Sequence record: PV231353.1
Length of the DNA stretch: 64,000 nt
Reading direction: 5' to 3' (one strand)
Below the pieces are notes generated by a model that saw only the letters and a program-made list of their open reading frames with translations, had not been told where the DNA came from and searched no databases. Of this stretch, positions 1 through 41,839 are shown in pieces (position 1 is the first letter of the stretch; the number at the start of each line of letters is the position of its first letter). The position numbers were made by a program, and so were the translations under genes.

Positions 1-3000
1 GGGCCGAACTGGGCAAGGAACTGGGCAAGGACTGGGGCAAGGCCCTGGACTACGCGGGCACGCGCCAGTCGATCGTCAACGGCGCCCTGAAGTCGGCGGC
101 CGGCGACAGCGCCACCCCGCAGGGAGCCTCCGACAAATTGACCGAGGCGGCCCTGGCGCAGATGAAGGCCGCCGACCAGCAGGCCCTCGCCGCCGCCGAC
201 CTGAAGGACGCCACGGCGAACTTCAAGAAGGACCTGGAGCCGCTCAACTTCAACGACCTCTTCAAGCGCGCCTCGGCCCTGGCTGATGGTAGCTTCGCAC
301 GCACCGCCGCCGCGTCCAAGCCGGGCGGCGTGATGGCGTCGCCGGCCGTGGCGACCCAACAGACCGCCGCCACCATCAAGACCGTCATGGCCTCGATGGG
401 CGATCGCGTGTACGCGACGGCTGGTCAGCACCTCGGACAGACCGAGGCCAAGGATGCGGCGTCGCTGCAAGCCTACTTCAAGGCCAACGGCGTCACCATC
501 GACCCCAAGAAGCTCTCCTGGTGCGCGGCCTTCGTCAACGCGGTCCTGGCCCAGAACGGGCTCTCGGGCTCGGGCTCGCTGGCGGCTTCGTCCTTCAAGG
601 ACTATGGCGACGAGGTCTCGCGCACTGACGCCCGCAAGGGCGACATCGTCGTCCTCAAGCCCCAGGCGGCGGGCGCCACCGGTCACGTCGGCTTCCTCGA
701 CGGCTTTGACCGTCACGGCAACGTGCGCGTCCTGGGCGGCAACCAAGGCGCGGCCGGCGGCGGCGGCGTCAACGTCTCGACCTTCGCCTCCAATCAGGTC
801 GTCTCCTTCCGTCGCACGGGCAGCGGCGGGGCCTCCAACTTCCAGGGCGGCGGCATCACCGAGGCCCAGGGCGAAGAAGGCGGTTCGCTGTACGAACGTC
901 GGATGAATATGGTCAAGGCGCTTGGCACGATCACGGGCCAAGCCTCGCCTGCTGCCGACGCCATTTCTGAGTATCAATCGTCTCTCGAAAAGCTCCGTGA
1001 CGTCCTGGTGTTCGAAGAAGGACTGGCTAAGAAGGTGGGTCCGGAGTTCCAGTCCATCTTCAACGCCAAGGTCCTGGAAGAGACGGTCGCCGCCCAGAAG
1101 AAGTGGAACCGCTCGATCGTCGAGGCGCTCAACCCGATCGCCAAGGAATCCCGGACCCTGGCCGAGGCCAACGACGTTCTGCAACTGCGCGCCAAGGGCC
1201 TGTCGCAGGAAGCCGACTGGCAAGAGCGCCTGACCGAACTGCGCAACTCCGGCATCAATGTCGACCTGATGCAGGACGAGGCCAAGTGGACCCAGTACCT
1301 GAACGAGTTGAAGAAGCAGGGCCTGGAGATCGACGTCAAGGCCCTGCAACTGAAGCCGGACGAACTGCGCTACCAGCAGGGCCGCGCCGAGGCGCTCCAG
1401 GCTGAACTCGACCTGACCAAGGCGCTGAACGACGCCAAGCTGGCGGGCATCGCCCGCACCGGTTCCAGCTATGACCGCACCCTGTCGGGCCTCGTCGCCG
1501 GCAAGGGCCGCGACGGCGAGACGCTCGACCAGACCCGTCAGCGTCTGGCGGGCTCGGTCGGCAGCGACGGCCGCAGCGCGCTGGAAGCCCTGCAAGAGCA
1601 GGCCGGCGTGATGGAAGGCTCGCGCATGGCCGACGTCAAGGCCAGCATGCAGTCGCAGCTTGAGATCATGCGCGAGAGCGCGCGCCTCAACAACACCCAG
1701 CGCGGCATCTACGACGACTACCGCAATATCCTGGGCGAACTGCTGAACAAGCAGGGCGCCTCGCTGAAGGAATTGCTGGACTCGGCCGACGAGGAGACCA
1801 AGCGTCTCGCCCAGTCGTTCGTCCGCGCCAAGGCGGACTTCGAAAACCCGCCCGGCTTCCAGAAGTGGGCCGACTCCCTGGAGCCGCTGGACAAGCGCCT
1901 CCAGGACATCAAGGCCAACTTCCTCGACAACTTCTCCGGCGGCATCACCGATGCGCTGCTGGGTGAGAAGGTCGACTGGAAGGCGATGCTGCACGATACC
2001 TTCAAGCAGATGCTGCGCGCCCAGGTCGATGAGGGTCTGAAGAGCCTCACCTACAAGCTGCTCGGCCAAGGTGGCGACCAGGGCGCGGCCCAAACCCCCG
2101 AAGCCCAGGCGCTAGTCTCGGCGGCCGATGTCCAATTGCAAGCCGGCAACAGCCTGCAACAAGCCGCCGCCAGCCTGATGCAGGCGGCTCAGACCACCGC
2201 GACCGCCGGCGCGGGCGGCGGCCTGGGCGTGATGACGGGCGGACCCGCGATGGGCGGCCTGGGCGGTCTCCTGGGCGGTGGCGGCGCCATGGGTGGCGGT
2301 GGCGGCCTCGGCGCGCTCGCCGGCGTCCTGGGCGGCGGCGATGGCACGGCGACCAACCCCTTCTCGATCGCCGACTCGATCCTCTCGCCGCTGGTCGTCG
2401 ACCAAACGGGCGGACCGGGCTTCCAGGCGGCGGGCGCGGCGCTCCAGGGGCTGAACATCACCCCGCCGGGTGGCGGCGGCTTCCTGTCGGGCCTGGGCTC
2501 GATGTTCCAAGGCGGCCTGGGCTCGATGCTGCAAGGCGCCCTGAGCTTCGCCGGTCCGCTGCTGGGCGGCCTGCTGACGGGCGGCAAGAAGAGCCCCAAG
2601 ACGCCGGCGAGCTACCGCATGCCGGGCGGCGTCATCGGTCAGGCGAGCACCAACAGCGTCTCGGGCCGCGTGGTTGGCCCCAAGCAAAACCTGATCGGCT
2701 CTCTGGCGAACCTGGGCTTCCAGTTGTTCGCGGGCGGCATGGGCGGCGGCGGCGGCCTGATGAGCATGTTCGGCATGGGCGGCGCTGGCGGCGCGGGAAG
2801 CTTCATTGGCTTCAAGGAAGGCGGCCTGACGGGCGCGCCGGTCAACCGTTATACCGTCTCCTCGCTGGGCTCGATGTTCGCCAACGCTCCGCACTATGCC
2901 GAGGGCACCAGCAACACCAAGCTGGCCAATGGCGGCATGCCGGCGATCGTCCACCCGGACGAGGCGGTGATCCCGCTGTCGCGTGGCCGCAACGTCCCGG

Positions 3001-3167
3001 TGGAACTGAAGGGCGCCGGCGGCGGAAGCTCGACCACCGTGGTCTCGCCGATCACCGTCTACGCCAACGACGTCGACAGCTTCCGCCCGGCCCAGGCGCA
3101 GATCGCCCGCAAGCAGAACCGCACCCTGCGCCGCGCGGCCTTGCGCAACGCCTCGATGGTCAACTAG
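1..3167 (+). CDS. Tail tape measure protein, 3' part (5'-truncated by window), with embedded CHAP/TIGR02594-like peptidoglycan hydrolase domain
   Basis: Frame open from position 3. Ala/Gly/Leu-rich helical sequence with typical C-terminal 'GFKEGG...HYAEG...AIVHPDEAVIPL' segment; internal 'SWCAAFVN...GDIVV...GHVGF...LGGNQ' motif; lies directly upstream of distal tail gene. Confidence 0.9.
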   Translation, partial: AELGKELGKDWGKALDYAGTRQSIVNGALKSAAGDSATPQGASDKLTEAALAQMKAADQQALAAADLKDATANFKKDLEPLNFNDLFKRASALADGSFARTAAASKPGGVMASPAVATQQTAATIKTVMASMGDRVYATAGQHLGQTEAKDAASLQAYFKANGVTIDPKKLSWCAAFVNAVLAQNGLSGSGSLAASSFKDYGDEVSRTDARKGDIVVLKPQAAGATGHVGFLDGFDRHGNVRVLGGNQGAAGGGGVNVSTFASNQVVSFRRTGSGGASNFQGGGITEAQGEEGGSLYERRMNMVKALGTITGQASPAADAISEYQSSLEKLRDVLVFEEGLAKKVGPEFQSIFNAKVLEETVAAQKKWNRSIVEALNPIAKESRTLAEANDVLQLRAKGLSQEADWQERLTELRNSGINVDLMQDEAKWTQYLNELKKQGLEIDVKALQLKPDELRYQQGRAEALQAELDLTKALNDAKLAGIARTGSSYDRTLSGLVAGKGRDGETLDQTRQRLAGSVGSDGRSALEALQEQAGVMEGSRMADVKASMQSQLEIMRESARLNNTQRGIYDDYRNILGELLNKQGASLKELLDSADEETKRLAQSFVRAKADFENPPGFQKWADSLEPLDKRLQDIKANFLDNFSGGITDALLGEKVDWKAMLHDTFKQMLRAQVDEGLKSLTYKLLGQGGDQGAAQTPEAQALVSAADVQLQAGNSLQQAAASLMQAAQTTATAGAGGGLGVMTGGPAMGGLGGLLGGGGAMGGGGGLGALAGVLGGGDGTATNPFSIADSILSPLVVDQTGGPGFQAAGAALQGLNITPPGGGGFLSGLGSMFQGGLGSMLQGALSFAGPLLGGLLTGGKKSPKTPASYRMPGGVIGQASTNSVSGRVVGPKQNLIGSLANLGFQLFAGGMGGGGGLMSMFGMGGAGGAGSFIGFKEGGLTGAPVNRYTVSSLGSMFANAPHYAEGTSNTKLANGGMPAIVHPDEAVIPLSRGRNVPVELKGAGGGSSTTVVSPITVYANDVDSFRPAQAQIARKQNRTLRRAALRNASMVN

Positions 3168-3250
3168 CTGTCACCCACGACAGTCGTGAATCTTGACGTT
3201 CCTGGATGATCGTGGCATCCAGGGACACCTCCTTTCATGGTTAATGCCCG

Positions 3251-3901
3251 ATGCCGAGCTTCCACGACGTCCTGTTCCCCGAGACCATCAGCTACGGCTC
3301 GTCCGGTGGTCCGAAGTTCAAGACCACGATCTTCCAGGCCGACAGCGGCTTTGAGCAGCGCAACAAGGACTGGAGCGACATCCGCTGCGAGTACGATGTC
3401 GCCCAGTCGATCCGCTCGACCGAGGACATGGACGAGCTTCGCGCCTTCTTCATGGCCCGCAACGGCCGCGCCCACGGTTTCCGCTACAAGGACTGGGGCG
3501 ACTTCCGCCTCAAGAACCAGTTGATCGGCGTCGGCGACGGCGTCACCAAGGTCTTCCAGATCGTCAAGACCTATACCAGCGTCGCCCACGACGGCACCGA
3601 GTACACCTACACCCGCACGATCCGCAAGCCCAAGTGGGACTCGATCGCCGGCGTCAAGGTCGGCGCCGTGGTTCAGGTCGCCCCGACCAACTACGAGGTC
3701 GACTATTCGACCGGCCTGATGACCTTCGTCACCGCGCCGCCGGCCGACGCCCCGGTCACCATTGGCCTGGGCGAGTTCCACGTCCCCGTCCGCTTCGACA
3801 CCGACTTCATGGACGTCACCCAGGAGTTCTGGATGCGCGAGACGTGGCCCAACATCCCGATCGTCGAAATCCGTGACTGGCAAGAGGCCCTGACGCCGTG
3901 A
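3251..3901 (+). CDS. Distal tail protein (DUF2460/TIGR02217, GTA-like)
   Basis: 'FHDVLFP..ISYGSSGGP.F.T.I...SG.EQRN..W' and 'VPVRFDTD' motifs; synteny. Confidence 0.9.
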   Translation: MPSFHDVLFPETISYGSSGGPKFKTTIFQADSGFEQRNKDWSDIRCEYDVAQSIRSTEDMDELRAFFMARNGRAHGFRYKDWGDFRLKNQLIGVGDGVTKVFQIVKTYTSVAHDGTEYTYTRTIRKPKWDSIAGVKVGAVVQVAPTNYEVDYSTGLMTFVTAPPADAPVTIGLGEFHVPVRFDTDFMDVTQEFWMRETWPNIPIVEIRDWQEALTP

Positions 3902-5523
3902 AATCCGTCCCCGATGACCTGATGGCGCACCTCCAGGAGGAGGTGACCACGCTCGCGACGTGCATCACGATCGTGCGCCAGGACGGCAAGGCGTTCTTCA
4001 TGACCGACCACGATCGGCCGATCAAGTTCGAGAACCAGACCTACGTCCCCTACGACTCCTACCAGCGCACGTCGATCCTGATGTCGTCGGAACTGGAAGT
4101 CGACACCGCCGACATCACCGCCTTCCTGACCTCGAACGGGGTGACGCGCGACGACGTGGCCTCGGGCCTGTTCGACTACGCCGCGATCAAGGTCCAGTTG
4201 CTGAACTACGAGCGGCCCGAGGACGGGGCGATCCTGCTCCGCAAGGGCACGTTCGGCGAAGTGACCATGAACCAGGACGAGACCTTCTCGGCCGAAATCC
4301 GGGGCATGACCCAGGTCCTGACCTACCGGGTCGGGGAGACCTACGCGCCCGAGTGCCGGGCCGACCTGGGCGATCGCCGCTGCAAGATCGGCCTGATGCC
4401 TGAGGAGTGGCAGGCCAACAAATACTACGGCCTCGACGCCTGCGTGCTGGGCGAACTCGTCGCCCCTACGTCGTTCGTCAATCCCGTGGTCGTCAACGGC
4501 AACTTCGAGGACGGCGCCCTCAACGCCGTCGTCACCGCGCCGACGGGCTGGGTGGCCTATGGCGATCCGACCAGCCGCTGGGTCTACAAGCACGACTGGT
4601 ACAATCTGTCGCGCCCGCAGGTCGGCAACCAGTTCATCGCCGCCACCCGCACCTCGATCTCCGACAAGCAGGAAGTCGCGGGCATCTACCAGGACATCAA
4701 CCTCATTTCCGCCGGCGTGCCCGCCGCCGCGATCGACGGCGGCCTCTGCCGCGTGCGCTACAAGTCCTTCGCCGCCTGCCTCAACAACCGCGCCCAGTCG
4801 CGCGAACGCCTGACCTGCATCAAGGCTGACGGCTCGGTGGAGACGATCTGGGACACCGGCGAGATCAAGTACCCCGAGGACCGCTGGATCGCGGTCAACG
4901 CCGATGACATCCTGATCCCGGCCGGCACGCGTGTCCTGCGCATCGACCTGTGGTCCAAGAAACGCAGCGTCCACGAGGAGGGCGCGGCCTATGATGGGAT
5001 CAGCCTGTCGATCAACCTGCCGGCAGGCACCGCCGGCAACGCCCATGTCTATGGCGGGGTGATGTTCAAGTGCATCCAGGCGGGGATCAGCGGCGGCACC
5101 CAGCCGGCCTGGACTAACGAACTGGGCGCCACCTATACCGACGGCACGGTCATCTGGCAGTGCGTGGCCAACTACAAGAAGGTGGGCACGGTCGCCACGG
5201 TCGCCTCCAACAAGTCCTTCACCTCGACCGACATCACCGAGCCGGCCGGTCACTACGACGGCGGCGTGCTCTACTGGGAAACCGGCCGCAACGCCGGACG
5301 CGCCCAGGAGATCAAGACCTGGGCCGCCAACCTCTTCACGCTTTTCCAGCGCACCTACTATCCAATCACGGCGGGCGACCGCTTCGTGGTCTATCCCGGC
5401 TGCGACAAGCGCCGCGCCACCTGTGCCGACAAGTTCCACAATATCCACAATTTCCGCGCCGAGCCCGACGTGCCCGGTCAGGACATCTACTACCGCACGC
5501 CCAACGCTCCGGAGCAGGAATGA
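3898..5523 (+). CDS. Baseplate hub protein (DUF2163/BR0599-like) with large internal insertion
   Basis: N-terminal 'TLATC..I.R.DG...TDHD..I' and C-terminal 'GCDK...TC..KF.N..NFR.EP.VPG' motifs; GTGA overlap with upstream gene. Confidence 0.88.
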   Translation: MKSVPDDLMAHLQEEVTTLATCITIVRQDGKAFFMTDHDRPIKFENQTYVPYDSYQRTSILMSSELEVDTADITAFLTSNGVTRDDVASGLFDYAAIKVQLLNYERPEDGAILLRKGTFGEVTMNQDETFSAEIRGMTQVLTYRVGETYAPECRADLGDRRCKIGLMPEEWQANKYYGLDACVLGELVAPTSFVNPVVVNGNFEDGALNAVVTAPTGWVAYGDPTSRWVYKHDWYNLSRPQVGNQFIAATRTSISDKQEVAGIYQDINLISAGVPAAAIDGGLCRVRYKSFAACLNNRAQSRERLTCIKADGSVETIWDTGEIKYPEDRWIAVNADDILIPAGTRVLRIDLWSKKRSVHEEGAAYDGISLSINLPAGTAGNAHVYGGVMFKCIQAGISGGTQPAWTNELGATYTDGTVIWQCVANYKKVGTVATVASNKSFTSTDITEPAGHYDGGVLYWETGRNAGRAQEIKTWAANLFTLFQRTYYPITAGDRFVVYPGCDKRRATCADKFHNIHNFRAEPDVPGQDIYYRTPNAPEQE

Positions 5524-38070: not shown

Positions 38071-38761
38071 AGAGAAGCTCCGGTTTGGCGCTGACCGGCT
38101 TGGACCACGACCAGACGTACCAAGCATAGGCGAAGCGCGGGGCGCCCTTGGTGCCGGCGATCCAGCGGGGGCGGTGACGAAGGGTGACCTTCGCGGTGAA
38201 GGCGGGGTGATCGAACAGGTCCGCGCGCGAGCGCGCCGCGTCCCATTCGTGGCGGCAGAGGAAGGCCACAAGGCCCTGGTCGGCCTCCATCAGGTCCAGC
38301 GCGTGGCGCGCGGCGCGCTCGGCGTCCTTGCCGTAGGGCGGGTTGGTGACGATCGCGTCCGGGCGCGGCGGCAGCGGCGTGTTCTTGCGCTCCTCGCCTT
38401 TCTCGTCGACAACCGTCTCGGGGCGGGCCTTCAGCGCGCCCAGGCGGTCGAGGTCGGCCGGTGTCAGCTTGAAGAAGTCCTCGACCGCGTCGACCTCGAA
38501 GCCCTCGTAGCGGTGGATGTCCGTGGCGAGGACCTCCTGCACGAAGGGCTTGAGCGGCGTGGCGATGGCGCCGTTGCCGGCGAAGGGCTCCCAGGCGAAG
38601 AACGGGGCGAAGTCATCGCCCAGGGCCTCGATCAGGGCGTCGAAGGCCGGCCGAGGAGTCGGGTAAAAGTCCAGCGGGGTCCTGGCATATCCGGAGGCGC
38701 CCAGCATGGAGGGGTCTTTGCGACCAGCATCGGAGAGAGACATGGTCGTGAGGGATGTCAT
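38060..38761 (-). CDS. Putative N6-adenine DNA methyltransferase
   Basis: 'DFYPTP', 'EPFAGNGAI', 'TNPPY'. Confidence 0.8.
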   Translation of the reverse strand: MTSLTTMSLSDAGRKDPSMLGASGYARTPLDFYPTPRPAFDALIEALGDDFAPFFAWEPFAGNGAIATPLKPFVQEVLATDIHRYEGFEVDAVEDFFKLTPADLDRLGALKARPETVVDEKGEERKNTPLPPRPDAIVTNPPYGKDAERAARHALDLMEADQGLVAFLCRHEWDAARSRADLFDHPAFTAKVTLRHRPRWIAGTKGAPRFAYAWYVWSWSKPVSAKPELLYAG

Positions 38762-38791
38762 GGTTAACGAAGGGTGTCAAGATTCACGACA

Positions 38792-38820
38792 TTGACTGTC
38801 GTGACGCAGCACGTTAATCA
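38792..38820 (+). promoter_or_regulatory. Sigma70-type promoter for the ROOL-like RNA
   Basis: TTGACT-N17-TAATCA, divergent from the methyltransferase promoter. Confidence 0.7.
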
Positions 38821-38829
38821 GGAGGCAAC

Positions 38830-39446
38830 GGGCCGTCCTTCTGCATTAGCCCCGCCGTCGCGCCTTCCAGGCGGCACGGGCCGGGACGGTGGTTGGTGAC
38901 GAGCAGGCCGAGGCAGCGGCGGGCGAGTCGAAGGAGAACCCGGCGAGCGGCGGAAGGCGTCGTTGACGCCCTCGGACTCGACAAGCACGGGGTGATGCCG
39001 GAAATCACCGCGATCGCGCGGACGTCTGGACGTTGCTAGGCGTAAGGCAGGCCTGCCGAGAAGTGGAAACGGCCGGGGCGGGCGGGACTTGATCTCGTCC
39101 GCCTTTCCGCCTAAGCTTCCCTCATTGCAGGCGCAGCACCGCCCTTCGCTAACGGCCCCGAGGGGTACGCAAGGGCTAGAAGCCTTGCCTGGGACAGGAC
39201 TGCCTCTGATCCAGGAACGCCCTGGGCCGCGTAGCGCCCATGACGCGAACGCCGGCCGAGAATGGGCGACTAGGCGTGACGGCGGCCAGAGGCCGCAGCG
39301 ACATTCCAAGCTCGATAGAGCGATCGGCGGGCCGGGGCGAAAGCCCTGTTTCGAGAGCCAGGGCAACCCGTCATAGGTCCTGGTCGGGCGACGAGGCAGC
39401 AAGTCCCGCGAACGGAGCCTCTGAGGCGGCGTCACCAAGATGCAGC
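38830..39446 (+). ncRNA. ROOL-like large ornate RNA (core 38893-39438)
   Basis: Perfect 9-bp closing stem TTGGTGACG/CGTCACCAA; ordered blocks GTTGCTAGGC..AAGG, CTAAGC..TCATTG, TAGC..C..GACGC, TTCCAA, CTGTT..GAG.GC, ATAGGT resemble ROOL as recalled; own promoter and terminator. Confidence 0.7.
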
Positions 39447-39451
39447 AGACG

Positions 39452-39486
39452 CAAAAAGGCCCCGATCGCGAGATCGGGGCCTTTTC
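39452..39486. terminator. Bidirectional Rho-independent terminator
   Basis: aaaaaggccccgatc-gcga-gatcggggcctttt. Confidence 0.9.
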
Positions 39487-39490
39487 ATGT

Positions 39491-39579
39491 TGGAGCTTCG
39501 GGAGGGACTCGAACCCTCATAGGTGTTCCCACCAGCAGAGATTTGCAATCCCGCGCCTAACCTCTCAGTCCACCGAAGC
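39491..39579 (-). tRNA. tRNA-Cys(GCA) with long variable arm
   Basis: 7-bp acceptor GCTTCGG/CCGAAGC, U73, encoded CCA, T-loop TTCGAGT, anticodon loop TTGCAAA, variable stem GGTG-GGAA-CACC. Confidence 0.9.
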
Positions 39580-39626
39580 ACAAAAGGACCTCGACGCCCG
39601 AAGGCCCGAGGTCCGATCCGTAACCA

Positions 39627-39754
39627 GGGGAGGGCCGTAGCTGTCCCCTGACCCTGAACGACAGGTGGCGGGCTTGGTCGTCATCCCGTCAGGCTCGCGG
39701 CGCCGCTCGCCTGAACCGCCGATATGCCACGAGGGCAGTGATCCGCAGGTCCCC
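39627..39754. ncRNA. ~128-nt rod-shaped RNA, 6S-like candidate
   Basis: GGGGA/TCCCC ends, stem-bubble-stem architecture, GTCCCCTGA and CCTGAACC blocks; hairpins on both sides; strand unresolved. Confidence 0.35.
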
Positions 39755-39763
39755 ATAAATAGC

Positions 39764-39798
39764 AAAAAGGCCACGATCCGCGAGGACCGTGGCCTTTT
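39764..39798. terminator. Bidirectional terminator
   Basis: aaaaaggccacg...cgtggcctttt. Confidence 0.85.
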
Positions 39799-39804
39799 CG
39801 TTTT

Positions 39805-40676
39805 CCGATGGGCTGAGACTACACCCATCAGCAATCCCGCTTCGAGGATTATTCCCCAGGTGCGACCCCAGGTATTCCCTCGACGTCCACCAGACCCCTT
39901 GCGGTAGTCCAGTCCGAGATCATCGCCGCCGTTCTTGCGCACCCCGAAGGGATTGCGGGTCTGGCGTTTGACCCATCATGGCGAACTACTCGACAGTTCC
40001 TTCCCCGCTGGGCTTGCGACCCACTCACCGGCGCTAACCGGCTGACGAAGCTCTTCCTATCGACACCTCGCGGGCTTGCGACCCTTGAGATGACTCCGTT
40101 ACCCGAAGGCCGGAGCATTTGGCGACTTACGTCCGCCACTGGACCAGTCTTTGCGTTTTTCATCGAAGCGGGGATTGAACCCGCGACCGACAGCTTAAGA
40201 GGCTGTTGCACTACCACTGTGCTATTCGCAAACCCACCAAGACGTGCTGGTCCAGTTGTTCCCAGAGCTTTTGACCCCAGAAATGCAACACGCCTCATAT
40301 CTTTCGCCTTGCGGGCTACTCGACTGCTCTTCAGGACCCCGTCTCCCCCAACCTTTCGGCCAGGATGCCCAGCACCCCTCGAACTGAAGCAAAGCTCTTC
40401 ACCGCGAAGTGTCGAACCCTGCAACCCAAACGGTTATCCGTACTCCCTAGACACGCTTGCACGGGATAGTCCGCTTGCGACGGACTGGCGGTTAAAGCCT
40501 CGGAGTTACCCCGGCCCCGCCTTGTCTCCCACGGTCTTCAGGTCTATCCCCTTTTGCAAGAGGCGGCCAGCTTCCCAGCCCGGACCCGTCGGCTTCCTCT
40601 GTCCTCTTGCGAGGTCGGGCGGCCTATGGGAGACCGTCCCTGTCACCCCGTCGCCGGGGCTTTCGTCAGAAGCGAC
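39805..40676 (-). ncRNA. GOLLD-like giant ornate RNA
   Basis: About 870 nt between a promoter and a terminator; many GNRA-capped hairpins on the minus strand; 3' blocks GAGUAGUUCG, AGGGAAUACC, GAAUAAUCC, GUGUAGUCUCAGC; tRNA body inserted in the middle. Confidence 0.7.
40161..40231 (-). tRNA. tRNA-Lys(CUU)-like body embedded in the GOLLD-like RNA (degenerate acceptor, no CCA)
   Basis: Intact D arm GCAC/GTGC, anticodon arm ACAGC-CTCTTAA-GCTGT, T arm GCGGG-TTCAATC-CCCGC; only 4 contiguous acceptor pairs. Confidence 0.8.
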
Positions 40677-40767: not shown

Positions 40768-40796
40768 TTGACATTCTCGGAGCCGCGTGCTAGGTG
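40768..40796 (+). promoter_or_regulatory. Sigma70 promoter for tmRNA/tRNA transcript
   Basis: TTGACA-N17-TAGGTG (GCTAGG). Confidence 0.75.
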
Positions 40797-40799
40797 TCG

Positions 40800-41175
40800 G
40801 AAATCGTTGTAATTCGGACAACGGAACTGGCGGCAAGACAGGGGTGCGAATCCCCTCGCCTCCACCATCGACGCCCGGCGCTGGGAGTACGCGACTCCTG
40901 GGCAGGGAGTGTTACCCTGGCGGGCTGCGGCCCGAGCCAAAGGTAGCCGGGCGTCGTTGATGGGGGCGACTAGCTTTCGATTGGCGCTCGGGACTGAAAG
41001 ACGCAACGGTGGGTGACCTCCACATCGGCTTGCCGGTGATCGGGTCAGGCAACAGTAAATGTCGCCGCCAATGACAACGACGTCGTGGCTTTCGCCTCGG
41101 CTCGTGAAGCCATCGCCGCCTAATAAGCGGTAGAGGAGCCCGCCGGGAGCTTGGCAACAGAATCCCGGCAACCCC
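40800..41175 (+). ncRNA. ssrA: Two-piece (permuted) alphaproteobacterial-type tmRNA
   Basis: Acceptor piece ends CGCCTCCACCA (40867); coding piece starts GGGGGCG (40962), giving G3:U70; tag frame 41061-41123 VAANDNDVVAFASAREAIAA*; inter-piece helix CGGCAAG/CTTGCCG. Confidence 0.93.
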
Positions 41176-41304
41176 CTTTCGCAGGCGGGAACACCAACAG
41201 GCGATCTGTCGGGCGACCGATTTCCGATCCGTGTTCCCGTCTTCGAAAGGTGGTCAGGCCTACCCTCTTGGTGTGCTATCCAAGGGTCTGGCCACTTTAC
41301 AGAA

Positions 41305-41383
41305 CGCGGGGTAGAGGAGTCCGGTTGTCCTCGTCTGGCTCATAACCAGGAGATCGTGGGTTCAAATCCCACTCCCGCTCCCA
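41305..41383 (+). tRNA. tRNA with CAU anticodon (Met; fMet-like C1:U72 mismatch)
   Basis: Cloverleaf, anticodon loop CTCATAA, encoded CCA; lacks the three consecutive anticodon-stem G-C pairs of initiators. Confidence 0.9.
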
Positions 41384-41388
41384 ATGCG

Positions 41389-41651
41389 AACGCCGGCTGT
41401 TGAGAACGACGGCGTGACAAGCTCGGAGAGAACGAGCACTCCAGTCCGGGGTATGAGGCCGGACTAGCGGACGCCGTAGCGATTGCAGGCGTGACACCCG
41501 GAGATAGCGGGACCGATTTTCCAGGCTCCATGCCCGGCGCGTCGGGGGCGGACAGTTAATCCGCCCGGCGTCAGAGGATGAGGCTAGTTCTCGGCGATGA
41601 AGCTGCGCGCGCAGTGAGAAAGCCAGGGCATGGCGCTTGGAAAGTCGGTTC
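41389..41651 (+). ncRNA. Unassigned structured RNA region (hairpin array plus long multibranch stem)
   Basis: Four or five tandem hairpins at 41389-41505; long stem GACCGATTTTCCA/TGGAAAGTCGGTT and CCATGCCC/GGGCATGG at 41511-41650. Confidence 0.45.
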
Positions 41652-41754: not shown

Positions 41755-41839
41755 GGTACGGTGGCTCGACAGGTAAGGCATCGGCCTCATAAGCCGAGGG
41801 TTCGTCCCAATCCTGGTTCAAATCCAGGTCGTACCTCCA
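41755..41839 (+). tRNA. tRNA with CAU anticodon (Met or Ile2) and extended variable arm
   Basis: Acceptor GGTACGG/TCGTACC, U73, CCA; anticodon arm TCGGC-CTCATAA-GCCGA; 14-nt variable region GGGTTCGTCCCAAT. Confidence 0.88.

What the first reader, a model, noticed from the sequence alone, without database searches (positions are those of the whole stretch)
38830..39446. ROOL-like ~0.6-kb RNA in a high-GC Caulobacter-type phage
Seen: promoter TTGACT-N17-TAATCA, 9-bp closing helix (38893/39438), outer CTGCAT/ATGCAG pairing and a downstream terminator. Blocks GTTGCTAGGCGTAAGG..CTGCCGAGAAGTGGAAA, CCTAAGC..TCATTG, TTCGCTAA, TAGC..CATGACGC, TTCCAAG, CTGTTTCGAGAGC..ATAGGT occur in the order I recall for ROOL. 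ROOL is mainly known from Firmicutes, Fusobacteria and rumen sequences, so a GC-rich alphaproteobacterial member would add strong covariation evidence. Family assignment is from memory.
Basis: partly seen in the sequence, partly recalled or inferred. Interest (0 to 1): 0.85.

Follow-up and report, generated by a model that had tools for sequence, protein, structure and literature searches.

The report
New large phage RNA, not ROOL
The flagged stretch of this Caulobacter phage (phiCbK-like RBC57) is a real, conserved, roughly 620-base folded non-coding RNA with its own promoter and terminator. It does not belong to the ROOL family and appears to be an undescribed large RNA, lying next to a known GOLLD RNA in the phage's tRNA island.

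Summary
The window is Caulobacter phage RBC57, a phiCbK-like phage.

**ROOL assignment fails.**
- The Rfam ROOL model gives no hit at E<=10 on the region, and none at E<=0.1 on seven homologous loci.
- The same model scores 130 bits on a true ROOL from L. salivarius pMP118.

**It is a structured RNA, not a gene.**
- Frameshifting indels, no third-codon-position bias, and a decaying ORF argue against coding.
- Across three phage lineages, 126 predicted pairs are 95.5% paired, with 35 pairs changed on both sides. Slid controls give about 43% paired and 4-13 such pairs.

**Architecture and spread.**
- A ~190-nt core ends in a ~70-nt module (39235-39304).
- The module recurs in tandem arrays and directly beside tRNA genes in related Caulobacter and Brevundimonas phages.
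- It was not found in bacterial genomes.

Neither is conserved.

**Function.** Unknown. The most likely role is a trans-acting RNA of the tRNA island, analogous to GOLLD and ROOL but not homologous to them.

The parts
38776..38804 (+). Conserved upstream motif GTCAAGATTCACGACAT, overlapping an inverted repeat TCACGACA/TGTCGTGA that brackets the -35 element. It is probably a phage regulatory or operator site.
   Evidence: The motif is invariant in all aligned phages. It occurs 8 times in the window against 0.5 expected. It is also found upstream of the Brevundimonas phage Bajun counterpart.
38792..38820 (+). Promoter: -35 TTGACT (38792-38797), 17-nt spacer, -10 TAATCA (38815-38820; TAGACA in phiCbK).
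   Evidence: Read directly. The -35 is invariant and the -10 is conserved as TA..CA. This pattern occurs twice in 64 kb against 0.11 expected. It was not listed by the strict sigma-70 scan.
38827..39452 (+). Body of the structured non-coding RNA, about 625 nt from the inferred start to the terminator. It has 23 predicted helices and six predicted multi-helix junctions.
   Evidence: Alignment A2 of 10 phages from 3 lineages; RNAalifold predicts 126 pairs. The transcription start is inferred from the promoter, not measured.
38841..39021 (+). 5' domain. It is closed by 38841-38845/39017-39021. It contains hairpins 38850-38880, 38904-38923 (invariant loop CGAGGCAGCG) and 38988-39012, plus helix 38883-38888/38967-38972.
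   Evidence: Helices 3-8. Coordinates mapped. Each of these helices has 1-4 pairs changed on both sides. This domain is found only in the phiCbK-like, Rogue-like and BL57 phages.
39023..39390 (+). Central super-domain. It is closed by 39023-39026/39387-39390, with nested helices 39032-39036/39298-39302 and 39039-39043/39217-39221, and a long hairpin 39070-39109 with invariant loop CUUGA.
   Evidence: Helices 9-13. Helix 11 has 4 of 5 pairs changed on both sides, and helix 13 has 5 of 16. Coordinates.
39128..39304 (+). Deeply conserved core: hairpin with loop CAGCAC (39130-39143), GGACUGC (39197-39203), hairpin 39223-39240, then the module.
   Evidence: nhmmer with the A2 profile aligns this part alone to CcrPW (E 7e-21), an uncultured viral contig L016 (2e-18), Kabachok (6.5e-9) and Bajun (3e-10). 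The alignment is A4.
39235..39304 (+). ~70-nt module: CUGAnGnGA, then stem P-a (39249-39254 with 39270 and 39273-39277) enclosing CCGAGA...CGAC, then GA, then hairpin P-b (39282-39286/39292-39296, loop CAGAG). GA dinucleotides on both sides of P-a could form tandem sheared G-A pairs (inference).
   Evidence: Covariance model R1 scores this copy at 81 bits. There are 24 copies of 49-85 bits in related phages. Covariation: 93% paired against 77% shuffled and 28-55% slid; all 5 P-b pairs are changed on both sides.
39305..39432 (+). 3' domain: GNRA hairpin 39334-39347 (GAAA loop), invariant UUUCGAGAGCCA, hairpin 39357-39384, hairpin 39393-39421, and invariant tail GCGUCACCAAGAU (39429-39441).
   Evidence: Helices 20-23. 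The anchors are found only in the long form.
39453..39489 (.). Bidirectional intrinsic terminator: a 10-bp G+C stem with an A-run before it and a T-run after it. It ends this RNA on the + strand and the convergent tRNA-Cys on the - strand.
   Evidence: Read directly. It matches the terminator hairpin of an unrelated sRNA model on both strands. It is listed on the - strand. It is annotated as a terminator in CcrKarma. It is conserved in all lineages.
41376..41445 (+). Second, variant copy of the module, starting directly after tRNA-Met (41305-41383). A weaker third copy lies at 41455-41519.
   Evidence: R1 scores 22.6 bits (E 4e-4) and 12.4 bits (E 0.24). The same arrangement is seen in Karma, Rogue and BL10.

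Best explanation
Window 38827-39489 (+ strand) is an independent gene for a ~620-660-nt highly structured non-coding RNA of phiCbK-like Caulobacter phages. It is not a ROOL RNA and matches no Rfam family.

**Shown:**
- It is non-coding.
- It is conserved, with many compensatory base-pair changes, over a multi-domain fold: a 5' domain, a central domain holding a ~190-nt core, and a 3' domain.
- It lies between a conserved sigma-70-type promoter and a bidirectional intrinsic terminator.
- The core ends in a ~70-nt module whose copies also lie directly next to phage tRNA genes and form tandem arrays in related phages.

**Inferred:**
- Host RNA polymerase transcribes it early from TTGACT-N17-TAATCA.
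- The RNA acts in trans as a folded RNA. It is a scaffold or docking RNA tied to the phage's tRNA and translation takeover island. It is functionally analogous to GOLLD and ROOL, but evolutionarily separate from them.
- In relatives where the core abuts tRNA-Cys on the same strand, its 3' end is made by RNase P cleavage of the tRNA precursor. In the phiCbK group a terminator took over that role.
For: **Not ROOL or any known family**
- No ROOL, GOLLD or other Rfam hit over 38830-39446 at E<=10, and none in homologues at E<=0.1.
- The positive control scores 130 bits.

**Non-coding**
- There are 1-nt indels even among phages that are 90-95% identical.
- 17 of 18 indels against Rogue are not multiples of 3.
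- Substitutions fall 78/86/88 over codon positions 1/2/3.
- The minus-strand ORF shrinks from 208 to 173, 134 and 107 aa.
- There is no Pfam hit.

**Structure**
- 126 pairs in 23 helices are 95.5% paired. Shuffles give 86.5% and slid controls about 43%.
- 35 pairs are changed on both sides, against 4-13 in slid controls.
- The covariation score is 0.316, against 0.05-0.09 in slid controls.

**Module**
- 28 copies are 93% paired, and the P-b hairpin is fully compensatory.

**Strand**
- Promoter and terminator orientation point to the + strand.
- Consensus energy is -140.6 on the + strand against -114.4 on the - strand.
- In the module, G-U outnumbers A-C 14 to 4.
- Module copies lie on the same strand as the tRNAs they abut: 2-8 nt before tRNA-Cys in CcrColossus, CcrPW and L016, before tRNA-Met in L016, and after tRNA-Met in the window.

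**Context**
- It sits in a ~3-kb protein-free RNA island with tRNA-Cys, GOLLD carrying a nested tRNA-Lys, a permuted tmRNA and two tRNA-Met genes.
Against: - The long form has only three independent lineages.
- The tested structure was predicted from the same alignment used to test it.
- MFE z-scores are weak: -0.7 for RBC57, -2.2 for Rogue and -3.3 for BL57.
- Pairs predicted on both strands do not discriminate the strand: 8 G-U against 6 A-C.
- Several long-range helices have plausible alternatives.
- No expression data could be reached.
- Nothing tested here bears on the function itself, on oligomerisation, or on the RNase P step.
Confidence: 0.72

Rival explanations
1. It is a very divergent GC-rich ROOL that the Rfam model is too narrow to detect.
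For: - Its size (~620 nt) is similar to ROOL's average of 581 nt.
- It has a similar number of predicted multi-helix junctions (six).
- It has the same setting in a phage tRNA island.
Against: - No ROOL hit at E<=10 in a 1.1-kb search, and none in 7 homologous loci, while the control scores 130 bits.
- No reader block and no 9-mer is shared with the ROOL consensus or a true ROOL.
- The conserved islands (CGAGGCAGCG, GCGCAGCAC, GGACUGC, GAACGCCGGCCGAGA, GGCGUGAC) have no counterpart in the consensus printed.
Confidence: 0.04
2. It is a protein-coding gene on the minus strand. It is annotated as hypothetical protein gp128 (phiCbK) and gp130 (Karma), and as 'DNA transfer protein' in RBC8 and BL64.
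For: - A 206-aa minus-strand ORF runs 38818-39438.
- It is annotated in several GenBank records.
- It matches PHROG 13461 at E 1.7e-100.
Against: - The ORF is not kept between lineages. Indels break the frame and there is no codon-position bias.
- Annotated lengths vary from 414 to 591 nt. It is left unannotated in RBC57, BL10, RBC11 and RBC63.
- There is no Pfam domain.
- The PHROG family has no known function. It probably consists of these same annotated ORFs, though its membership was not examined.
- Long spurious ORFs are expected at 68% G+C.
Confidence: 0.03
3. The functional RNA is on the minus strand. It would be a long structured leader of the DNA methylase / T5 A1-like operon, or an antisense transcript reading through from tRNA-Cys.
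For: - The methylase operon starts at 38761 on the minus strand, and no separate promoter for it was identified.
- Watson-Crick covariation is strand-symmetric. The minus strand also gives 124 predicted pairs, 34 of them compensatory.
Against: - The terminator hairpin with a T-run lies between tRNA-Cys and the element on the minus strand.
- Consensus energy favours the + strand.
- Module G-U pairs would become A-C mismatches on the minus strand.
- Module copies share the strand of adjacent tRNAs in five contexts.
- The conserved + strand promoter points into the element.
Confidence: 0.07
4. The unit of function is the ~70-nt module, not the large RNA. The module would be a processing element for tRNA-linked transcripts. 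It would be either a protein or RNase recognition site or a new self-cleaving ribozyme. The 620-nt transcript would be a precursor.
For: - The module is the most conserved part.
- It occurs in tandem arrays with a period of 225-255 nt.
- It abuts tRNA 5' or 3' ends.
- About 25 nearly invariant nucleotides lie in loops and junctions.
Against: - In the phiCbK group the 5' and 3' domains are also conserved, with covariation and invariant islands of their own.
- Long-range helices enclose the module, which argues for one large fold.
- No known ribozyme family matches.
- No cleavage data exist.
Confidence: 0.12
5. It is a DNA-level element, such as an origin, a packaging site or a recombination site, rather than an RNA.
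For: A long gene-free, highly conserved stretch with many inverted repeats.
Against: - Compensatory changes maintain many short, nested and long-range helices. This is typical of RNA.
- G-U pairs are tolerated.
- It is bracketed by a promoter and a terminator.
Confidence: 0.03

Closest known systems
ROOL RNA (Rfam RF03087)
   Same: - A large (~0.6 kb) multi-junction non-coding RNA.
- Encoded by phages and prophages near tRNA genes.
- Function unknown.
   Different: - No covariance-model hit and no shared conserved nucleotides.
- ~68% G+C, against 40% in the L. salivarius control ROOL, and an alphaproteobacterial phage host.
- Built around a repeated ~70-nt module that ROOL lacks.
- Oligomeric cage formation is untested.
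GOLLD RNA (Rfam RF02032)
   Same: - Same phage and same tRNA island: a GOLLD copy lies 360 nt away at 39810-40296 on the other strand.
- Both are linked to tRNAs. GOLLD carries a nested tRNA-Lys. The new RNA's core abuts tRNA-Cys in related phages.
   Different: - No GOLLD hit over the element.
- The two occur independently. Rogue-like phages have the element but no GOLLD. The Colossus and CcrPW loci have core and module arrays but no GOLLD.
- GOLLD in phiCbK-like phages is already listed in Kretsch et al. 2025 (PMC12286853). This RNA appeared in none of the papers searched.
GA-motif / k-turn-containing RNA modules (for example the base of T-box Stem I); comparison from general knowledge
   Same: The module has GA dinucleotides on both strands directly flanking stem P-a, with a 3-nt stretch before the 5' GA. 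It also has AGAG-type loops.
   Different: - The canonical C-helix partner strand is not complementary. At best it would be a junction variant.
- No T-box or other Rfam model matches.
- This is a resemblance read from the sequence, not a test.
PHROG 13461 / phiCbK gp128 'hypothetical protein'
   Same: It covers the same DNA on the opposite strand. This is how databases currently label the locus.
   Different: The comparative data show no selection for a reading frame. The annotation is most likely an artefact of ORF calling in G+C-rich DNA.

Membership tests
ROOL (RF03087) | Significant match to the Rfam covariance model (gathering score 99.1 bits) | tested here: not met
   No ROOL match at E<=10 over 38600-39700. 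None at gathering score in the whole window. None at E<=0.1 in 7 homologous loci. The control, L. salivarius pMP118, scores 130.4 bits.
ROOL (RF03087) | Conserved nucleotides and blocks of the ROOL consensus | tested here: not met
No 9-mer is shared.
ROOL (RF03087) | About 580 nt with six multistem junctions (Weinberg 2017, PMC5737381) | tested here: met
   About 625 nt. The RNAalifold consensus has six multi-helix junctions. This is a resemblance of scale only, not of topology.
ROOL (RF03087) | Three conserved pseudoknots | not tested
   Candidate loop-loop complementarities were seen by eye (GGCAG/CUGCC and CUUG/CAAG). Both partners are invariant, so covariation cannot test them.
ROOL (RF03087) | Located in phages or prophages, often near tRNAs | tested here: met
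   It lies in a phiCbK-like phage, adjacent to tRNA-Cys, GOLLD/tRNA-Lys, tmRNA and tRNA-Met.
ROOL (RF03087) | Homo-octameric RNA cage (Kretsch 2025) | not testable with these tools
   Needs in vitro transcription followed by mass photometry or cryo-EM.
GOLLD (RF02032) | Match to the Rfam covariance model | tested here: not met
   GOLLD hits 39810-40296 (-) at 169 bits. It does not hit the element, even at E<=10.
Independent structured non-coding RNA gene | No conserved reading frame | tested here: met
   frameshifting indels, flat codon-position profile, decaying ORF; no Pfam domain.
Independent structured non-coding RNA gene | Compensatory base-pair changes above controls | tested here: met
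   35 pairs changed on both sides against 4-13 in slid controls, and 0 of 500 shuffles reach the observed covariation score. One search shows the same for the module.
Independent structured non-coding RNA gene | Own promoter and terminator | tested here: met
   Conserved TTGACT-N17-TA..CA and a conserved hairpin with T-run. Both are sequence-level only.
Independent structured non-coding RNA gene | Detected transcript of the expected size and strand | not testable with these tools
   The phage sheet of the phiCbK RNA-seq table is not in the held text.
k-turn (GA motif) | Tandem sheared G-A pairs next to a 3-nt bulge, followed by a canonical helix | tested here: inconclusive
   GA/GA flanking P-a and the preceding 3 nt are nearly invariant. 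The expected C-helix strands are not complementary.

The most novel reading that the evidence does not exclude
This would be a third, previously unrecognised class of large 'ornate' phage RNA, alongside GOLLD and ROOL.
- It is confined to Caulobacter and Brevundimonas Dolichocephalovirinae phages.
- It is built on a ~190-nt core and a ~70-nt module that also flanks phage tRNAs.
- The module would be a new tRNA-linked functional unit: a docking or processing site, or a new self-cleaving ribozyme.
- The full RNA could assemble into a higher-order RNA particle, as GOLLD and ROOL do.
- Because phiCbK and C. crescentus are genetically tractable and the phage also carries GOLLD, the function of such RNAs could be dissected there.
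Probability: 0.3. Interest if true: 0.85.

Novelty: new variant of a known kind. Interest (0 to 1): 0.62.

Why it matters
Large structured bacterial and phage RNAs are rare, and the functions of GOLLD and ROOL are still unknown. This finding matters for four reasons:
- A classic model phage (phiCbK and its relatives) carries a second large conserved RNA of a different family, in the same tRNA island as GOLLD.
- The new RNA shares a sequence module with the spacers around the phage's tRNAs. That gives a concrete handle on the link between these RNAs and tRNA biology.
- It offers a genetically tractable host-phage pair for knock-outs.
- It corrects a mis-annotated 'hypothetical protein' / 'DNA transfer protein' present in more than a dozen GenBank records and in PHROGs.

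Tried and rejected
- **Rfam.** Gathering-threshold scan of the whole window, and a permissive scan of the region. Only the terminator hairpin, tRNA-Cys and chance-level hits appeared.
- **ROOL.** Rejected after the positive control.
- **Protein reading.** Rejected.
- **Metagenome pattern scan.** 16 loci, of which about 5 carry weak module-like sequences (20-27 bits) and one (L024) a strong copy.
- **Genome scan of 185,579 species.** 8 loci, all at chance level, at most 19 bits.
- **Viral-contig scans for the 3' domain and for the core.** Only the known cultured phages plus 3 chance matches without the module.
- **Single-sequence MFE z-scores.** Uninformative at this G+C content.
- **Strand test on pairs predicted for both strands.** Not discriminating.
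- **Structure-aware realignment (mafft-qinsi).** Not installed.
- **MFE folds of the core in 9 phages.** No obvious common architecture beyond the module.
- **Expression data.** The phiCbK infection RNA-seq supplement is truncated before the phage table.
- **Literature searches.** No description of this RNA was found. Two language-model preprints and the Fremin 2023 catalogue do not mention Caulobacter phages.
- **11-nt GAAA-receptor idea.** CCUAAG at 39110 plus the GAAA loop at 39339 is not conserved in Rogue or BL57, so it was dropped.

Full report
**What the window is.** Bases 38780-39490 are 100% identical to Caulobacter phage RBC57 (PV231353.1). They are 90-99.6% identical to CcrKarma, phiCbK, Ccr10 and CcrMagneto/Swift. 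They are about 70% identical over part of their length to the CcrRogue/BL10 group and to BL57. A 55-nt piece also matches CcrColossus, CcrPW and several Brevundimonas phages.

**Observation check.** The following are all in the sequence as stated:
- the promoter TTGACT (38792-38797), a 17-nt spacer, and TAATCA (38815-38820);
- the pairings CTGCAT/ATGCAG and TTGGTGACG/CGTCACCAA;
- the downstream hairpin with T-run (39453-39489);
- all nine sequence blocks.

The 35 nt around the -35 element are invariant in lineages that are otherwise about 70% identical, and the terminator is conserved too. The two 'closing' pairings fare worse. The 9-bp helix is complete only in RBC57 and Karma, and is 57% paired over 10 phages. 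A 3-bp core of it shows U-A/G-C/C-G changes in three lineages but fails in phiCbK, Ccr10 and Magneto. The outer 6-bp helix has lost its 3' strand in the Rogue lineage.

**ROOL test.** A gathering-threshold Rfam 15 scan of the whole window finds no ROOL. A permissive scan (E<=10) of 38600-39700 lists only tRNA-Cys, the terminator hairpin and chance-level hits. Seven homologous loci from other phages give no ROOL at E<=0.1. As a positive control I fetched the ROOL locus of L. salivarius pMP118. Its coordinates come from the ROOL alignment in Kretsch et al. 2025. It scores 130.4 bits, E 6.5e-27. ROOL membership is therefore not supported. Only size, complexity and genomic setting resemble ROOL, as defined in Weinberg 2017.

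**Not a protein gene.** Several GenBank records annotate a minus-strand 'hypothetical protein' here: gp128 in phiCbK and gp130 in Karma. RBC8 and BL64 call it 'DNA transfer protein'. The annotated lengths range from 414 to 591 nt, and other records leave the stretch unannotated. In the alignment:
- single-base indels separate even close relatives;
- 17 of 18 indels against Rogue and 15 of 17 against BL57 are not multiples of three;
- substitutions are flat over codon positions (78/86/88);
- the longest ORF falls from 208 aa to 173, 134 and 107 aa.

There is no Pfam domain. The only family hit is PHROG 13461, 'unknown function'. That family probably consists of these same annotated ORFs, though its membership was not examined.

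**A structured RNA.** Ten phages from three independent lineages were aligned (A2). Conservation is patchy in the way typical of RNA. Invariant islands are separated by variable stretches. The islands are:
- CGAGGCAGCG
- GCCGAGA
- CUUGA
- AGGCGCAGCAC
- GGACUGC
- UGAnGnGAACGCCGGCCnAGA
- AGGCGUGACG
- UUUnGAGAGCCA
- CCUGGnCnGGCnACGA
- GCGUCnCCAAGAU

RNAalifold predicts 126 pairs in 23 helices. On these pairs:

| Measure | Observed | Shuffled | Slid partners |
|---|---|---|---|
| Cells paired | 95.5% | 86.5% | ~43% |
| Pairs changed on both sides | 35 | 24.8 | 4-13 |
| Covariation score | 0.316 | 0.164 | 0.05-0.09 |

None of 500 shuffles reaches the observed score.

The predicted fold has three parts, six multi-helix junctions and a GNRA hairpin (coordinates):
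- a 5' domain, 38841-39021;
- a large central domain, 39023-39390, with nested long-range helices;
- a 3' hairpin, 39393-39421.

Caveats: there are only three lineages, the structure was derived from the same alignment, single-sequence MFE z-scores are weak, and some long-range helices have alternatives.

**Strand.** Watson-Crick covariation cannot tell the strands apart, and the pairs predicted on both strands are uninformative. The + strand is favoured for four reasons:
- the conserved promoter and the terminator point that way;
- consensus energy is -140.6 on the + strand against -114.4 kcal/mol on the - strand;
- in the module, G-U outnumbers A-C 14 to 4;
- module copies always lie on the strand of the tRNA they abut.

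**Core and module.** Profile searches show that only the central ~190 nt are shared with more distant phages. This is window 39128-39304: the GCGCAGCAC hairpin, GGACUGC, and a terminal ~70-nt module. It is found in CcrPW, an uncultured viral contig (L016), Kabachok and Bajun. The 5' and 3' domains exist only in the phiCbK-like, Rogue-like and BL57 phages.

The module runs as follows: CUGAnGnGA, stem P-a enclosing CCGAGA...CGAC, GA, then hairpin P-b with an AGAG-type loop. I modelled it as a covariance model. Strong copies (49-85 bits) occur:
- once in each long-form RNA;
- 3-4 times in tandem, with a period of about 225-255 nt, in CcrColossus, CcrPW and Kabachok;
- at least 7 times in L016.

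In CcrColossus, CcrPW and L016 the last copy ends 2-8 nt before tRNA-Cys on the same strand. In L016 another copy abuts the second tRNA-Met. In the window, Karma, Rogue and BL10, a variant copy starts right after the first tRNA-Met: window 41376-41445 at 22.6 bits, with a weaker one at 41455-41519. Across 28 copies the model's pairs are 93% paired, against 77% shuffled, and all five P-b pairs change on both sides.

Pattern scans found one strong extra copy in metagenomes (L024) and a few weak ones. They found nothing above chance in one genome for each of 185,579 bacterial and archaeal species. The family appears confined to this phage group.

**Context.** The element opens a ~3-kb stretch with no evident protein-coding gene. 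In order it holds:
- tRNA-Cys (39491-39579, -);
- a GOLLD RNA (39810-40296, -, 169 bits) with tRNA-Lys nested in it and its own terminator;
- a permuted tmRNA (40775-41214, +);
- two tRNA-Met genes.

GOLLD in phiCbK-like phages is already listed in the supplementary GOLLD alignment of Kretsch et al. 2025. The element and GOLLD occur independently of each other. On the other side lie, divergently, a DNA methylase and a T5 A1-like gene. This order is kept in all relatives.

**How it most likely works.**
- *Shown:* a conserved, non-coding, multi-domain fold between a conserved promoter and terminator. Its most conserved part is a module shared with the spacers that flank the phage's tRNAs.
- *Inferred:* host RNA polymerase makes a ~620-660-nt RNA that acts in trans as a folded RNA within the phage's tRNA/translation island. 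The module is a docking or processing unit for a protein, an RNase or tRNA. In relatives where the core abuts tRNA-Cys, RNase P cleavage would release it. In the phiCbK group, inversion of tRNA-Cys and a terminator replaced that step, and extra 5' and 3' domains were added.

Whether it oligomerises like GOLLD and ROOL is open. Rivals are listed with their evidence: a divergent ROOL, a protein gene, a minus-strand leader, the module as the real functional unit or a ribozyme, and a DNA element.

**Novelty.** No Rfam 15 family matches. I found no description in the searchable literature, including the phage structured-RNA catalogue of Fremin 2023 and two 2026 language-model surveys. Absence from these sources is not proof. 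I rate it as a new family of a known kind, namely large structured RNAs of phage tRNA islands.

**Verdict.** The element is a credible new large RNA whose function is unknown but testable in a tractable phage-host pair.

Noticed in passing
window 39810-40296 (-), with tRNA-Lys nested at 40159-40232: A GOLLD RNA (Rfam 169 bits, E 8e-46) with a tRNA inside its linker, followed by its own terminator at 39763-39800. The less conserved 5' domain probably extends toward about 40700. GOLLD in phiCbK-like phages is already listed in Kretsch et al. 2025.
   Followed up: partly
window 41376-41445 and 41455-41519 (+), between tRNA-Met 41305-41383 and tRNA-Met 41755-41839: The ~370-nt spacer between the two tRNA-Met genes holds one or two variant copies of the same ~70-nt module (22.6 and 12.4 bits). 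The arrangement is conserved in Karma, Rogue, BL10, CcrColossus and CcrPW. The spacer may be another structured RNA.
   Followed up: partly
window 15881, 24459, 25416, 31529, 33844, 35529, 38782, 50786: A 17-nt motif, GTCAAGATTCACGACAT, recurs 8 times against 0.5 expected. It mostly sits just upstream of transcription units and is also found upstream of the Bajun (Brevundimonas phage) counterpart. It is probably a phage promoter or operator element. At the RNA gene it forms an inverted repeat around the -35 element.
   Followed up: partly
window 39491-39579 (-) and 41755-41839 (+): tRNA-Cys(GCA) is 89 nt, with a ~17-nt insertion at the variable arm and U at the discriminator position. The second tRNA-Met(CAU) is 85 nt. 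Long extra arms are unusual for these tRNA identities.
   Followed up: no
window 40775-41214 (+): A phage-encoded two-piece (permuted) tmRNA with tag peptide VAANDNDVVAFASAREAIAA. Related tmRNAs occur at the same place in Rogue, BL57, Colossus, CcrPW, Bajun and contig L016.
   Followed up: no
GenBank records of phiCbK (gp128), Karma (gp130), Ccr10, Magneto, Rogue (gp125), RBC8/BL64 ('DNA transfer protein'), CcrPW gp171; PHROG 13461: ORFs annotated over the RNA gene and over the CcrPW module array are most likely artefacts of ORF calling in G+C-rich DNA. The 'DNA transfer protein' label has no support here.
   Followed up: yes
L016 (IMGVR_UViG_3300033068_001629) 1099-5038: An uncultured phage carries at least 7 module copies spread over about 4 kb upstream of tRNA-Cys, tmRNA and two tRNA-Met genes. 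Whether the whole 4 kb is non-coding was not settled; ORFs of 100-250 aa are present but not evaluated.
   Followed up: partly
window 39586-39762: About 180 nt between tRNA-Cys and the GOLLD terminator has a further hairpin with T-run (39586-39607, -) and no assigned feature.
   Followed up: no
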